Source of the DNA: Octopus sinensis
Taxonomy: Eukaryota
Direction of reading: 5' to 3'
DNA: 64,000 nt
Assembly (NCBI RefSeq): GCF_006345805.1
Contig: NC_043012.1
Span: 37,820,001 to 37,884,000, forward strand
The first letter of the stretch is position 1; every line of letters begins with the position of its first letter. The notes beneath the pieces are model-generated. The model saw only the letters and a list, made by a program, of their open reading frames with translations. It searched no databases and was not told where the DNA came from. Positions 48,423 through 51,400 of the stretch are shown here, piece after piece. The position numbers were made by a program, and so were the translations under genes.

Positions 48423-51400
48423 CCTCCAGAATTAGCAGCAAGACAAAAAAGAGCCAACCAGAGGCAAACTCAGCCGAGTCCCAACAAGTTTTGTTGCTGA
48501 GTATGGAAGGACTTACTCTGAAACCAAACGAAGCAGCTGCTACACAGAAGACTGTGAAAGGGACCAGTGAGGAATTCCCTGCCAAAAGAGAGAAACACAC
48601 AGCAAGATTTGCATGTGAACCAGTTCTTACGGCTTTTAATGAAGAATCTATAAGAAATTGTTTATCTTCTGTTTCTCAGAATGAGGAACCTTCTTCTGGT
48701 GCTGGGCTGACCAATTTAAGGTGTAACAGTACTGAGTCTTCTGAGCCAGACATTTCTGATGATGAATATTTACCTCTTAAAGAAAGAATAAAGAACTCTT
48801 GTGTACAAATTCAAAACCATAAACCAAAGAAGGAAATGTCTAGAACATCATTATTACCATCATTTACCAATTCCATTAAATCAGAAACTAACTCTGAAAC
48901 AGACTCCAAAAGCAGGAGTCAAATCCGAAACTCTGCAAGTGTATCAATGTGTTCTGATCAACAGACCAATACCATCGGTCACGGTGCCAGTATTATTGAG
49001 TCAATTGATTTAACAGGAAATTCTTATTCCTCTTGTCCAGAGATAGACTCTTCCAATGATGAAGACTCTGATGATAGCCTATATCTTCCTGTTTCTCACA
49101 AACTGCTTAACCGTTACCAAATTTCTGGTGAGTCTCAAAACGAAGATAACTTTCAGTCTAACCAATGCCTCCCATTAGATTCCTCTCAGTTTCCATGTGA
49201 TGACAGCATCAAAATAAACCATTGTGAAAGAATGGAAGAACTGAATAAATCAATAGAGTTTTCTCAAAAATTTCCAGATAATTCTGCTGAACCCTTTGAC
49301 AATTCTCAGTTATCCAAAATGGCTGAAATAACTGAACAGTTCTTCCTGTTGAATGTAAATGAAGTAGAAGCCTTGTCATCAAATCTTTCTGGAATGGTAT
49401 CAATGGCTACACTTCAACAGTGTAAGGACACTGTCGAGAGGTCATTTGGTACAGATGCCAAGCAGCTATATACGGATGCTATGAAGAGGTCATGTAGTAC
49501 AGATGCTACACAAGTGTGTACAGACACTGTTGAGAAGTCTACAGATGCTACACAAGTGTGTACAGACACTGTTGAGAGGTCATTCAGTACAGATGCTACA
49601 CAGCTGTCTACAGACACTATCAAGAGATCATTTAGTACAGATGCTACACAGCTGTGTACTGACCCTGTTGAGGGGTCATTCTGTACAGATGCTACACGAC
49701 TGTATACAGATATTATCGAGAGATCATTTAGTACAGATGCTACACAACTGTGTATGGACATTGTTGAGAGGTCATTCAGTACAGATGCTACACAGCTGTC
49801 TACAGACACTATCGAGAAGTCATTTAATACAGATGCTACACAGCTGTGTACTGACCCTGTTGAGGGGTCATTTAATACAGATGCTACACAGCTGTGTACT
49901 GACCCTGTTGAGGGGTCATTTAATACAGATGCTACACAGCTGTGTACTGACCCTGTTAAGGGGTCATTTAATACAGATGCTACACAGCTGTGTACTGACC
50001 CTGTTGAGGGGTCATTCTGTACAGATGCCACACTGCTATGTACAGATATTGTTACTGATGCGACCCAACTTTGCACTAATACTCTTGAAGTTCCATCCCA
50101 GACAGATGCCATTCAACTTTTAGCTGAAAATCAATCACTACACCCACCCATAAAAGATGGAAGCAGATTGTCGACCAAAGACACAAAATTCTATTCTGCT
50201 GGAGACTTTTCCCTCCATGATGTACAGGAGGGTCCATGCTGTTCCTTGCCACCCAGTTTGAAGACGTCTTTCAATGAATCTCTTCAACATAGAAACTGTA
50301 GCAACACAATTTCAAACTATTCTATAAACGGAGAAGACAATGCATCCCTTCTTTTTTGTAATTCCACTTCTGTTAGTAATACTATTTCTGACATAAGTAA
50401 CCATTCTCAGACCCCCGAAGACAGTTCTATGCTGTTTATGAATGACAAAAACTCTGTAAGTCCTGATCATGTTCTCAAAAATAGTTCCTTGATATCAAAT
50501 CATTGTTTAAATCCAACCAAAACTGAAACTGCTTCTCAGCATCTTGAGAATTTGTCTGAAAGTGTGTCAGACATCACAGTTTCAGAGAACACAGTAGTAG
50601 AGTTTCATGGATCAAAGACGCCAGGAGGTGCTTTAGCCATGCAAGAATTCCCTGTCTCTAACAAGGATCCTGAAGAAGATGCAATTCCATACTCATCGTT
50701 TGAAGATTATTCTTCAATTATGGATGCTGTTTATAACTTAACACCTGACTCTCTGAATTCTTTCAGTGAAAGCAGGGTGGGGAATTTTGAACTCATCTCT
50801 TCTCTTTTAGACAATTCTTCTGAATTCAAGTTGGATTCTGATTCTCCTAAAATTTCTGAAAACATGAAGACTCATATATTCAACTCGACAACTAATTCTG
50901 GTTATAAAAACCAGATGGAAATTAAATATTCTTGTAGAAAGAACTCTCTGACCAATTTGCAAAAGAATTCATGTTTTATTTTGTCTCCTTACATCAGTTC
51001 TGTAGAGAAGACATCAAGTCTTCTGAAATCTCCAAATAATGATGCCAGTTTTTCTTACAATACAACAGTTGGTTCACATGAAATGTCTGGTGCAGTACCA
51101 AATTCTTCTGCTTCTGTTCTTCAAGAAAATTTAAGAACTGGATTAAATGATAAATTGATTTTTAAATCTTCAAAAGAGTCTGCAGGTTTAGAGAATGAGA
51201 ACACTAAAGTCAAGTCTCCGCATGAAGGATATATAAGTTCATTGTCTTGTGAAAATATTCATAGTAGTCCAAAGCAAACGTCATTTCAGCAGGGAGGTTC
51301 TTCAACGTTTGAAGAGATGAGTTACCTTTCTGGTTTCGATGATTCTTTCTCCCCATTTGATGTCACCAAAACAATAACTCCGAGATCAATTAATCAGAAT

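What the first reader, a model, noticed from the sequence alone, without database searches (positions are those of the whole stretch)
49403..50120. GEN1 tail contains a tandem TQ-repeat array, a candidate ATM/ATR phospho-cluster
Seen: about 14 units of 16 aa, 11 with TQ and most with a second T-D-x-[VI]. All length variants keep the frame, and four consecutive units are nearly identical (recent expansion). The protein would be 1483 aa versus 908 aa in human (recalled). Known: ATM/ATR phosphorylate S/T-Q clusters; FHA domains read pT-x-x-[ILVD]; human GEN1 is controlled by nuclear export and yeast Yen1 by CDK/Cdc14. Inference: a lineage-specific, possibly length-polymorphic, damage-responsive scaffold on a resolvase.
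Basis: partly seen in the sequence, partly recalled or inferred. Interest (0 to 1): 0.7.

Follow-up and report, generated by a model that had tools for sequence, protein, structure and literature searches.

The report
Conserved TQ-motif repeat in octopus GEN1
The DNA-repair nuclease GEN1 of octopuses carries, in its long regulatory tail, 11 to 18 tandem copies of a 16-residue motif (SFxTxxTQLCxD) that selection has kept for a very long time; it looks like a multi-site kinase and docking platform, but nothing yet shows that it is phosphorylated.

Summary
The window is the Octopus sinensis GEN1 locus: 11 GT-AG exons reproduce the 1483-aa XP_036365911 exactly. The last exon holds a 48-bp, in-frame tandem array at about 49403-50140, with 14 units and 11 TQ.

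The array is not a recent O. sinensis feature. It is 100% identical in DNA in O. vulgaris. It is present in O. bimaculoides (11 to at least 12 units) and in Argonauta hians (about 18 units), which is at synonymous saturation from Octopus.

Eight positions are constrained: S1, F2, T4, T7, Q8, L9, C10 and D12 (pN/pS 0.12-0.25). They show as much synonymous variation as the other eight positions, which drift almost neutrally (0.6-0.84). TQ is therefore conserved, but as part of a longer motif.

A profile search of 1.84 billion proteins found the repeat only in octopod GEN1. 69 other GEN1 tails lack it.

AlphaFold gives a weak β-solenoid for the near-perfect Octopus units (pLDDT 67). For the more diverged Argonauta units it gives pLDDT 41, which favours disorder.

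Best reading: a selected, multivalent linear-motif array that formally qualifies as an S/TQ cluster domain. ATM/ATR phosphorylation remains untested.

The parts
13676..51640 (+). Octopus sinensis GEN1 coding region, 11 exons: 13676-13836, 21504-21705, 25097-25186, 30578-30664, 31028-31212, 34123-34225, 36786-36869, 38177-38316, 41181-41242, 45099-45218, 48423-51640
   Evidence: A GT-AG exon chain found by script translates exactly to P0001 (1483 aa plus stop). tblastn mapping is. Pfam XPG_N covers aa 1-91, XPG_I 130-213 and Chromo_2 348-401. The best PDB match is human GEN1 5T9J at 2e-105.
48423..51640 (+). Last exon, encoding the whole non-catalytic tail (aa 412-1483)
   Evidence: It is a single open frame. 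Pfam finds no domain in it. Between Octopus and Argonauta only a few islands are conserved, and the array is the largest of them, at 50-70% identity against 0-25% in the flanks.
49442..50092 (+). Core tandem array: 14 units of consensus SFSTDATQLCTD[TP]VE[RG] (aa 752-968), with 11 TQ at T774, 788, 804, 820, 852, 868, 884, 900, 916, 932 and 959
   Evidence: TRF gives period 48 and 13.3 copies.
49403..49441 (+). Degenerate leading partial unit (ATLQQCKDTVER)
   Evidence: Read from the translation. O. bimaculoides has the same edge, ATLQQSKDTVER.
50093..50140 (+). Degenerate trailing unit (PSQTDAIQLLAENQSL)
   Evidence: Read from the translation. O. bimaculoides has the orthologous edge PSQTDATQPLAENQSL.
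49538..49579 (+). In-frame short unit of 14 aa (STDATQVCTDTVER), which lacks the F and x positions
   Evidence: O. bimaculoides has an orthologous 14-aa unit, STDTTQVCTDIIKR.
49820..50011 (+). Four near-identical units, SFNTDATQLCTDPV[E/K]G
   Evidence: They are 98-100% identical pairwise in DNA. O. vulgaris has them unchanged. O. bimaculoides lacks them and instead has at least 3 copies of SFSTDATQLCTDTVER.
50012..50092 (+). Terminal unit pair SFCTDATLLCTDIV plus TDATQLCTNTLEV. The 'TL' unit seems positionally orthologous across species.
   Evidence: O. bimaculoides has SFCTDATLPCTGIV plus TDATQLCTNTLEV. Argonauta has SFSADVTLLCTDPLVR following a DPVEG unit.

Best explanation
The array is a selectively maintained tandem series of a short linear motif, S-F-x-T-x-x-T-Q-L-C-x-D followed by about four free residues. 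It sits in the long, probably disordered, regulatory tail of octopod GEN1. That much is shown.

The following is inferred. Each unit offers a Thr-Gln site, with no basic residue within four positions, that a PI3K-like kinase (ATM, ATR or DNA-PK) could phosphorylate. The conserved S1/T4/T7 spacing of three residues would allow further, primed phosphorylation. The 11-18 copies would then act together as a graded, multivalent switch or docking platform. A phospho-Thr reader could bind them, or the added charge could act in bulk. Either way the array would control where and when the nuclease acts, or couple it to damage signalling, as the C-terminus of C. elegans GEN-1 does.
For: **Shown**
- The array is coding, in frame, and in both annotated isoforms.
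- It is present in O. vulgaris, O. bimaculoides and Argonauta hians.
- Octopus and Argonauta are at pS 0.60 (dS about 1.2) in the catalytic domain. Units within Argonauta are almost as diverged synonymously (pS 0.555). The array is therefore old and is not kept uniform by recent homogenisation.
- Core positions 1, 2, 4, 7, 8, 9, 10 and 12 have pN/pS of 0.12 in Argonauta, 0.25 in O. sinensis and 0.20 in O. bimaculoides, with pS as high as at the other eight positions. Those eight have pN/pS of 0.6-0.84.
- In Argonauta T7 is encoded by ACA, ACT and ACC in 17/17 units, and Q8 by CAG and CAA in 16/17.
- The array is the largest conserved island of the tail.
- The repeat occurs only in octopod GEN1 among 1.84 billion representative proteins.
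- AlphaFold confidence collapses for the diverged Argonauta units (pLDDT 40.6). This fits disorder and a linear-motif reading.

**Inferred from the literature**
- At least 3 S/TQ in 100 aa defines an SCD (PMC3564818).
- ATM-phosphorylated TQXF repeats in MDC1 dock FHA proteins (PMC11884936).
- The C. elegans GEN-1 C-terminus confers damage signalling (PMC2908289).
- Position 7 is Thr in 37/39 units and never Ser, as a pThr-specific reader would require. This is weak evidence.
Against: - There is no direct evidence of phosphorylation or of any binding partner.
- The loose SCD definition is met by over 25% of yeast proteins, so meeting it says little.
- S1, F2, C10 and D12 are as conserved as TQ. 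A kinase consensus alone does not explain that, and a phospho-independent motif would fit as well.
- Position +3 after T7 is Cys, which matches no characterised FHA preference that I know of (from memory).
- Human GEN1 is reported to be regulated independently of phosphorylation (PMC4172962).
- The 'core' positions were picked after seeing their conservation, so their low pN is partly circular. Only their undiminished pS is independent evidence.
- Transcript evidence could not be inspected directly.
Confidence: 0.4

Rival explanations
1. The array is a multivalent binding motif that does not depend on phosphorylation, or a repeat that folds (for example a β-solenoid or β-roll). On this reading the conserved F2, L9, C10 and the polar ladder S1/T4/T7/Q8/D12 serve structure or direct contact, and TQ is incidental.
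For: - Eight of 16 positions are conserved, including four consecutive residues (T7, Q8, L9, C10) and an invariant Cys. That is more than a kinase site needs.
- AlphaFold2 folds nine O. sinensis units into regular two-strand coils with pLDDT 67 and pTM 0.58.
- The charge-hydropathy value lies on the order/disorder boundary, 0.459 against 0.454.
Against: - The five AF2 models disagree (pLDDT 67, 56, 49, 27, 27).
- The more diverged Argonauta array gives pLDDT 40.6 and pTM 0.31.
- Foldseek finds no PDB relative better than E = 0.18, only generic β-helices.
- AF2 is documented to invent confident β-solenoids for near-perfect repeats (PMC11795689).
- The array is 30% Ser+Thr with a net charge of -25 over 220 aa.
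- There is no sequence relative in the PDB.
Confidence: 0.25
2. The array is a tolerated coding minisatellite. It arose by replication slippage or unequal exchange in a permissive disordered tail. Only the reading frame is selected, because the conserved C-terminal motifs lie downstream. The similarity between units would then reflect shared descent or homogenisation and not function.
For: - Copy number and unit types turn over between species: 14, 14, 11 to at least 12, and about 18 units.
- There are lineage-specific blocks, such as 4 x SFN..DPVEG in O. sinensis/O. vulgaris, at least 3 x TDTVER in O. bimaculoides, and a 6-unit segmental duplication in Argonauta.
- Half of each unit evolves almost neutrally (pN/pS 0.6-0.84).
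- Other animals' GEN1 proteins do without the array.
Against: - The array has been retained, with the same consensus, across a split that is saturated at synonymous sites.
- Core residues stay fixed while their own codons vary synonymously.
- Mean DNA identity between Argonauta units (0.679) is no higher than between Octopus and Argonauta units (0.704). Homogenisation therefore cannot explain the conserved residues.
- The neighbouring tail sequence has decayed to 0-25% identity over the same time.
Confidence: 0.1
3. The array is an annotation artefact. It would really be intronic or untranslated, or it would belong to an overlapping gene in one of the other open frames (49503-50123 + or 49414-50112 -).
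For: Two other frames are open across the array in O. sinensis, giving ORFs of 206 aa and 232 aa. Transcript reads could not be inspected.
Against: - The GEN1 frame is continuous with conserved coding sequence on both sides in four species.
- Annotations from different sources (RefSeq XP_ records for O. sinensis and O. bimaculoides, the deposited O. vulgaris and A. hians models) all include it.
- pN/pS is below 1 in this frame.
- In Argonauta the alternative frames break into ORFs of 96-179 aa, while the GEN1 frame stays open for 1498 aa.
Confidence: 0.03

Closest known systems
S/TQ cluster domains (SCDs) of ATM/ATR (Tel1/Mec1) substrates such as Rad9, Rad53/Chk2, Mrc1 and Hop1
   Same: The S/TQ density is high: 11 TQ in about 190 aa, one every 16 residues. 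That far exceeds the definitions of at least 3 in 100 aa or at least 3 in 50 aa (PMC3564818). The array lies in a non-catalytic region of a DNA-repair protein, and its S/TQ sites are conserved across orthologues.
   Different: Classical SCDs are irregular clusters whose flanks are not conserved. This array is a strict 16-residue tandem repeat in which six further positions are as conserved as TQ, and every site is TQ, never SQ. Phosphorylation is unproven.
MDC1 TQXF repeats (four in human MDC1, aa 699-768), phosphorylated by ATM and bound by the FHA domains of RNF8 and Pellino 1/2
   Same: Both have several copies of a conserved Thr-Gln motif with a conserved residue at +3, in a disordered part of a DNA-damage protein. 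Multivalency gives several docking sites (PMC11884936).
   Different: Position +3 is Cys (35/39 units) and not Phe. There are 11-18 copies rather than 4. The host is a nuclease, not a γH2AX-bound adaptor. No reader is known.
Regulatory C-terminal tails of GEN1/Yen1: human GEN1 NES 660-LLSGITDLCL-669, Yen1 CDK/Cdc14 sites, and the C. elegans GEN-1 C-terminus needed for checkpoint signalling
   Same: The position in the protein is the same: the unstructured tail after the chromodomain. The logic would also be the same, with the tail controlling when and where the nuclease acts (PMC4519697; PMC4172962; PMC2908289).
   Different: The array matches none of six CRM1 NES patterns and has no S/T-P sites. 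Nothing like it was found in the 69 other GEN1 sequences retrieved, including the full-length scallop, apple-snail, fish, Ciona and fly proteins; about half of the records are fragments with little or no tail. The octopod tail is about 1070 aa, against about 300 aa in other molluscs.
MDC1 PST repeats and similar in-frame coding minisatellites in DNA-damage proteins
   Same: Both are tandem, in-frame, Thr/Ser-rich units whose copy number differs between species, inside a disordered region (PMC6858307 is listed but I did not read it in detail; the repeat properties are from memory).
   Different: The unit length differs (16 aa against about 41 aa) and so does the motif. There is no sequence similarity.

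Membership tests
GEN1/Yen1 (Rad2/XPG family Holliday-junction resolvase) | XPG_N and XPG_I nuclease regions close together, without the long XPG spacer | tested here: met
   Pfam XPG_N covers aa 1-91 (44 bits, cut-off 22) and XPG_I aa 130-213 (91 bits, cut-off 24.9).
GEN1/Yen1 (Rad2/XPG family Holliday-junction resolvase) | GEN1-type chromodomain after the nuclease core | tested here: met
   Pfam Chromo_2 covers aa 348-401 (50 bits, cut-off 25). The second aligned stretch to human GEN1 5T9J covers this region.
GEN1/Yen1 (Rad2/XPG family Holliday-junction resolvase) | Closer to GEN1 than to FEN1, XPG or EXO1 | tested here: met
   Human GEN1 5T9J scores 2e-105, against 1e-37 for XPG, 1e-26 for FEN1 and 1e-14 for EXO1. 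The best database relatives are named GEN homolog 1, for example Pecten at 46% identity.
GEN1/Yen1 (Rad2/XPG family Holliday-junction resolvase) | Holliday-junction cleavage activity | not testable with these tools
   This needs biochemistry.
S/TQ cluster domain (SCD) | At least 3 S/TQ within 100 aa (stricter version: within 50 aa) | tested here: met
   TQ occurs at aa 774, 788, 804, 820, 852, 868, 884, 900, 916, 932 and 959. The definition comes from PMC3564818.
S/TQ cluster domain (SCD) | S/TQ sites conserved in orthologues | tested here: met
   T7 is conserved in 37/39 units and Q8 in 35/39 across three species. In Argonauta pN is 0.000 and 0.045 at these two positions, with pS of 0.66 and 1.24.
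S/TQ cluster domain (SCD) | Sites phosphorylated by ATM/ATR after DNA damage | not testable with these tools
   There are no phosphoproteomic data. This is the defining functional feature and remains open.
MDC1-type pTQXF FHA-docking repeat | T-Q-x-F/Y, with an aromatic residue at pT+3 | tested here: not met
   Position 10 is Cys in 35/39 units, Tyr in 2 and Ser in 2. The two Tyr units are the ones that lack TQ (KQLY and TRLY).
   T11 is present in 11/12 O. sinensis units and 7/10 O. bimaculoides units but only 5/17 Argonauta units, where Asn is commonest. V/I at position 14 is present in 10/17 Argonauta units.
β-solenoid / structured tandem repeat | A confident, reproducible repeat fold with structural relatives | tested here: inconclusive
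   AF2 gives pLDDT 67 for O. sinensis units, with models ranging from 27 to 67, and 40.6 for Argonauta units. The best Foldseek hit against the PDB has E = 0.18. AF2 has a known β-solenoid artefact for repeats (PMC11795689).
CRM1 nuclear export signal (as in human GEN1 660-669) | The Φ-spacing patterns of NES classes 1a-d, 2 and 3 | tested here: not met
   There is no match in the O. sinensis array and only two isolated matches in the Argonauta array. The human NES matches classes 1a and 1b. T[DEQ]LC is not found in other GEN1 tails.

The most novel reading that the evidence does not exclude
Octopods have, since before the Octopus/Argonauta split, equipped their Holliday-junction resolvase with 11-18 checkpoint-kinase (ATM/ATR) phospho-Thr docking sites of a new type, pT-Q-L-C in the context SFxTxxTQLCxD. 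This would make GEN1 itself a damage-signalling scaffold that recruits a pThr reader. It would be a built-in version of the signalling role that genetics assigns to the C. elegans GEN-1 C-terminus.
Probability: 0.2. Interest if true: 0.65.

Novelty: new variant of a known kind. Interest (0 to 1): 0.45.

Why it matters
GEN1/Yen1 must be kept away from replication intermediates. Yeast does this by CDK/Cdc14 phosphorylation and human cells by nuclear export, so the tail is where lineages invent their own control. Here a whole clade has kept a dense, regular TQ-motif array in that tail.

If the array is phosphorylated by checkpoint kinases, it would be a third, damage-linked mode of resolvase control. 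It would also be a natural example of a graded multi-site switch built by repeat amplification, and it would give a molecular handle on the unexplained signalling role of the GEN-1 C-terminus in worms.

The clean split of each unit into eight constrained and eight nearly neutral positions also makes the array a useful model for how linear motifs are maintained inside evolving tandem repeats.

If the array is not phosphorylated, it is still a clade-specific conserved motif with an unknown partner. That is of interest mainly to cephalopod and DNA-repair specialists.

Tried and rejected
1. **Amplification of an ancestral GEN1 motif.** A single-unit HMM and regular expressions run over 69 GEN1 homologues from molluscs, annelids, fish, tunicates, flies and flatworms found nothing (best E = 3.6, bit scores at or below zero). 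Rejected.

2. **Likeness to the human GEN1 NES (ITDLCL against ATQLCT).** The array fits no NES class, and the likeness is not shared by other GEN1 tails. Rejected as chance.

3. **Repeat shared with other proteins.** The profile search returned only octopod GEN1. The 13 weaker hits that passed E <= 0.001 (3e-13 to 7e-4) are unrelated low-complexity repeats, as seen in the six I inspected (bacterial adhesin-like and similar).

4. **Third word-indexed search with the repeat alignment.** It returned nothing, not even the known members, so it was uninformative.

5. **Transposon or minisatellite family.** There is no copy of the unit elsewhere in the 64-kb window.

6. **Overlapping gene in another frame.** Rejected, because those frames are broken in Argonauta.

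7. **β-solenoid fold.** Not supported once the diverged array was modelled.

8. **PDB sequence search with the array.** Only noise, with E of 0.09 or worse.

9. **Transcript evidence.** The exact-protein look-up found only the genome assemblies.

10. **Squid, cuttlefish, Vampyroteuthis and Nautilus.** No GEN1 from these animals was in the searchable protein sets. The origin of the array therefore cannot be dated more deeply than the Octopodidae/Argonautidae ancestor.
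Full report
**What the window is.** The window is eukaryotic, with about 33-47% GC and many microsatellites and retrotransposon fragments. A search with the translated long open frame at 48458-51637 returned a 100% match to a 1483-aa Octopus sinensis protein, LOC115220307 isoform X1, which UniRef names 'Flap endonuclease GEN homolog 1'. A script that chained GT-AG splice sites around the tblastn hits gave 11 coding exons from 13676 to 51640, and their translation equals that protein residue for residue.

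The protein carries XPG_N (aa 1-91), XPG_I (130-213) and the GEN1-type chromodomain Chromo_2 (348-401). All three score above Pfam's cut-offs. Its best solved relative is human GEN1 5T9J at 2e-105, well ahead of XPG at 1e-37, FEN1 at 1e-26 and EXO1 at 1e-14. Calling the gene GEN1 is therefore sound. The last exon (48423-51640) encodes the whole 1072-residue tail, in which Pfam finds nothing.

**The observation.** Tandem Repeats Finder reports a 48-bp period with 13.3 copies at 49420-50053, at 82% matches and a score of 715. In the GEN1 frame this gives 12 full 16-residue units, one 14-residue unit, and a terminal 14+13 pair, covering aa 752-968 (49442-50092). A decayed partial unit lies on each side (49403-49441 and 50093-50140). 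Eleven units carry TQ, and eleven carry T-D-x-[VI]. The four units at 49820-50011 are 98-100% identical in DNA. The unit occurs nowhere else in the window.

**Relatives.** The 90%-identity cluster of the protein also holds isoform X2 (1443 aa). X2 lacks only exon 10 (45099-45218) and keeps the array. The cluster also holds an O. vulgaris model that is fused to an upstream THAP gene. The O. vulgaris array is identical to the window over all 747 bases, while the whole last exon is 99.63% identical. The 'recent' four-unit block therefore predates that species split, and these two independent assemblies show no length difference.

O. bimaculoides has the array too. Its current assembly has a run of N inside it, which splits the gene model in two, leaving 7 units before the gap and 5 after. 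An older model has 11 units. The edges of the array correspond unit for unit with O. sinensis: the first SFGTDAKQ unit, the 14-residue unit, and the final TL unit plus TDATQLCTNTLEV. The interior differs, with at least 3 copies of SFSTDATQLCTDTVER in place of 4 copies of SFNTDATQLCTDPVEG.

Argonauta hians belongs to a different family of incirrate octopods. It has a 1480-aa GEN1 with about 18 units in two blocks separated by a poly-Ser insert.

**How old, and is it selected?** Between Octopus and Argonauta the catalytic domain has pS 0.60 (dS about 1.2) and pN 0.13, so synonymous sites are near saturation. Along the tail, amino-acid identity falls to 0-25% except in a few islands. The array is the longest island, at 50-70%.

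Within Argonauta the units differ from one another at pS 0.555. Their mean DNA identity (0.679) is no higher than between Octopus and Argonauta units (0.704). Apart from one 6-unit segmental duplication, the units are old and are not being homogenised.

Against that background, S1, F2, T7 and C10 are invariant in all 17 Argonauta units. Q8 is kept in 16, T4 in 15, and L9 and D12 in 13 each. The codons vary: T7 uses ACA, ACT and ACC, Q8 uses CAG and CAA, F2 uses TTC and TTT, and L9 uses five Leu codons.

Taking these eight positions together, pN/pS is 0.12 in Argonauta, 0.25 in O. sinensis and 0.20 in O. bimaculoides, and their pS is as high as elsewhere. For the other eight positions pN/pS is 0.84, 0.79 and 0.60. 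The core set was chosen after seeing the data, so its low pN is partly circular. The undiminished pS is the independent point, because it rules out DNA-level conservation or gene conversion as the cause.

The selected object is therefore the motif S-F-x-T-x-x-T-Q-L-C-x-D plus a nearly free spacer. They are not more conserved than S1, F2 or C10.

**The second motif.** T-D-x-[VI] holds in Octopus, but position 11 is Thr in only 5 of 17 Argonauta units, where Asn is commonest. As a conserved FHA ligand it fails.

**Distribution.** A profile of three-unit segments from the three species was searched against 1.84 billion representative proteins. It found only the two octopod GEN1 clusters (1.8e-137 and 8.3e-53). 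The remaining hits, at 3e-13 and weaker, were unrelated low-complexity repeats in the six I inspected. Other molluscan GEN1 proteins are about 700 aa long (scallop 713, apple snail 707). None of the 69 GEN1 sequences retrieved, about half of them fragments, contains the motif. No squid, cuttlefish or Nautilus GEN1 was available, so the origin can only be placed at or before the Octopodidae/Argonautidae ancestor.

**Folded or disordered?** AlphaFold2 on nine O. sinensis units, with a shallow alignment, gave a regular two-strand-per-unit coil with pLDDT 67 and pTM 0.58. The five models ranged from 27 to 67. Foldseek found only generic β-helices, at E of 0.18 or worse. AF2 is documented to give confident but unrealistic β-solenoids for near-perfect repeats (PMC11795689).

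As a control I modelled the 11 more diverged Argonauta units. Confidence fell to pLDDT 40.6 and pTM 0.31. The array is 30% Ser+Thr, has a net charge of -25 over 220 residues, and sits on the charge-hydropathy boundary. I read this as favouring a disordered linear-motif array, although a fold is not excluded.

**Mechanism.** The array exceeds the SCD definition (at least 3 S/TQ in 100 aa, or in 50 aa) several-fold (PMC3564818). That paper also notes that over a quarter of yeast proteins meet the loose definition.

The nearest worked example is MDC1. Its four TQXF motifs are phosphorylated by ATM and then bind the FHA domains of RNF8 and the Pellino proteins (PMC11884936). In octopod GEN1 the +3 residue is a conserved Cys rather than Phe, so this is not a TQXF motif. 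The logic of a pThr site with a conserved +3 residue and many copies is the same. Position 7 is never Ser in 39 units, which is what a pThr-specific reader would demand, though this evidence is weak.

The conserved S1, T4 and T7 are spaced three residues apart. That is the spacing used by primed, hierarchical phosphorylation (CK1 after a phosphate at -3, or CK2 before an acidic or phospho residue at +3). This point is from my own knowledge and is not tested here.

There is precedent for GEN1 tails carrying regulation. Yen1 is controlled by CDK/Cdc14 (PMC4519697). Human GEN1 is controlled by a NES at 660-669 and explicitly not by phosphorylation (PMC4172962). In C. elegans the GEN-1 C-terminus is needed for damage signalling (PMC2908289).

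I therefore commit to a phospho-regulated multivalent docking or switch array as the most likely function, at about 0.4. The main alternative is a phospho-independent binding or folded repeat (0.25). The minor alternatives are a merely tolerated coding minisatellite (0.1) and an annotation artefact (0.03). The remainder is left open.

**Verdict.** The gene is GEN1, and the array is clade-specific, coding and conserved at TQ. But the array is ancient rather than recent, is not shown to be length-polymorphic, is constrained as a 12-residue motif and not as bare TQ sites, and its proposed second FHA motif is not conserved. Phosphorylation is untested. I found no paper on it: no article in the library contains 'octopus', 'GEN1' and 'Holliday junction' together. 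I class it as a new variant of a known kind, namely S/TQ cluster or tandem linear-motif arrays in DNA-damage proteins, and rate it of moderate interest.

Noticed in passing
window 45099-45218 (exon 10): This 120-nt in-frame cassette (aa 372-411) is the only difference between isoform X1 and isoform X2 (XP_029646271.2, 1443 aa). Skipping it removes the last third of the Chromo_2 match (aa 348-401). X2 may therefore have an impaired chromodomain and weaker DNA recognition.
   Followed up: partly
window ~48482-48526 (aa 432-446, QQVLLLSMEGLTLKP): This is a candidate CRM1 nuclear export signal at the start of the tail. It fits NES classes 1a, 1b and 2 and is conserved in Argonauta (QQVLLLSMKGLSL) and O. 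bimaculoides (QQVLLLNMEGLTL). It lies at a different position from the human GEN1 NES (aa 660-669).
   Followed up: partly
window 51569-51637 (aa 1461-1483, SPLPLVMRLGKHFNAQRIKNFKK); also aa ~543-551 EYLPLKERI and ~653-661 LYLPVSHKL: GEN1 tails of distant animals end in an acidic patch followed by P-L-x-x-R-[LF]: scallop DYIPLSQRV, apple snail EHLPLFQRL, cyprinid fish RPLAERLKMRF, Ciona MTLAERLRL, Drosophila TPLERFKQ. The octopus tail has this motif at its end plus two further internal copies, each after an acidic Ser/Asp run. I know of no assigned function.
   Followed up: partly
window 25305-28038 (+), 8987-9982 (+), 19320-19904 (-): These are fragments of non-LTR retrotransposons (Exo_endo_phos_2, RVT_1 and a PHD finger) in GEN1 intron 3, upstream of exon 1, and in intron 1. 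Their frames are broken into several ORFs, so they are probably dead copies.
   Followed up: partly
L002 ~20124-20134 (O. bimaculoides GCA_001194135.2, CM046615.1): An assembly gap (run of N) lies inside the repeat array and shifts the frame. RefSeq therefore splits GEN1 into 'flap endonuclease 1, partial' (XP_014770736.2, 859 aa) and an 'uncharacterized' 625-aa protein (XP_052829126.1). The older model (1495 aa) has 11 units, so the true copy number is unresolved.
   Followed up: yes
L003 (O. vulgaris OX597828.1), protein CAI9734280.1: The O. vulgaris GEN1 model (1719 aa) is fused at its N-terminus to the neighbouring 209-aa THAP-domain gene, which is LOC115220526 in O. sinensis. This is probably a gene-model merge. 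The THAP gene itself lies outside this window.
   Followed up: partly
window 49414-50112 (-) and 49503-50123 (+): Two further long ORFs (232 aa and 206 aa) run through the array in other frames. They exist only because the unit has no stop codon in those frames. In Argonauta the same frames are broken.
   Followed up: yes
L001 10193-10533 (Argonauta hians GEN1 last exon): Argonauta has a second, unrelated tandem array just upstream of the TQ array, with period 39 and 8.5 copies. It overlaps the annotated GEN1 coding sequence only at its 3' end (about 10503-10533, roughly 10 residues); about 0.2 kb of this stretch is absent from the annotated protein. Octopus has no counterpart.
   Followed up: no
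window 48298-48377 and many other sites: (TAA)n and (AT)n microsatellites lie directly upstream of the last exon's acceptor. A SINE-like element recurs throughout the introns on both strands; its translation reads ...HHHLTSVFHAGMGW....
   Followed up: no
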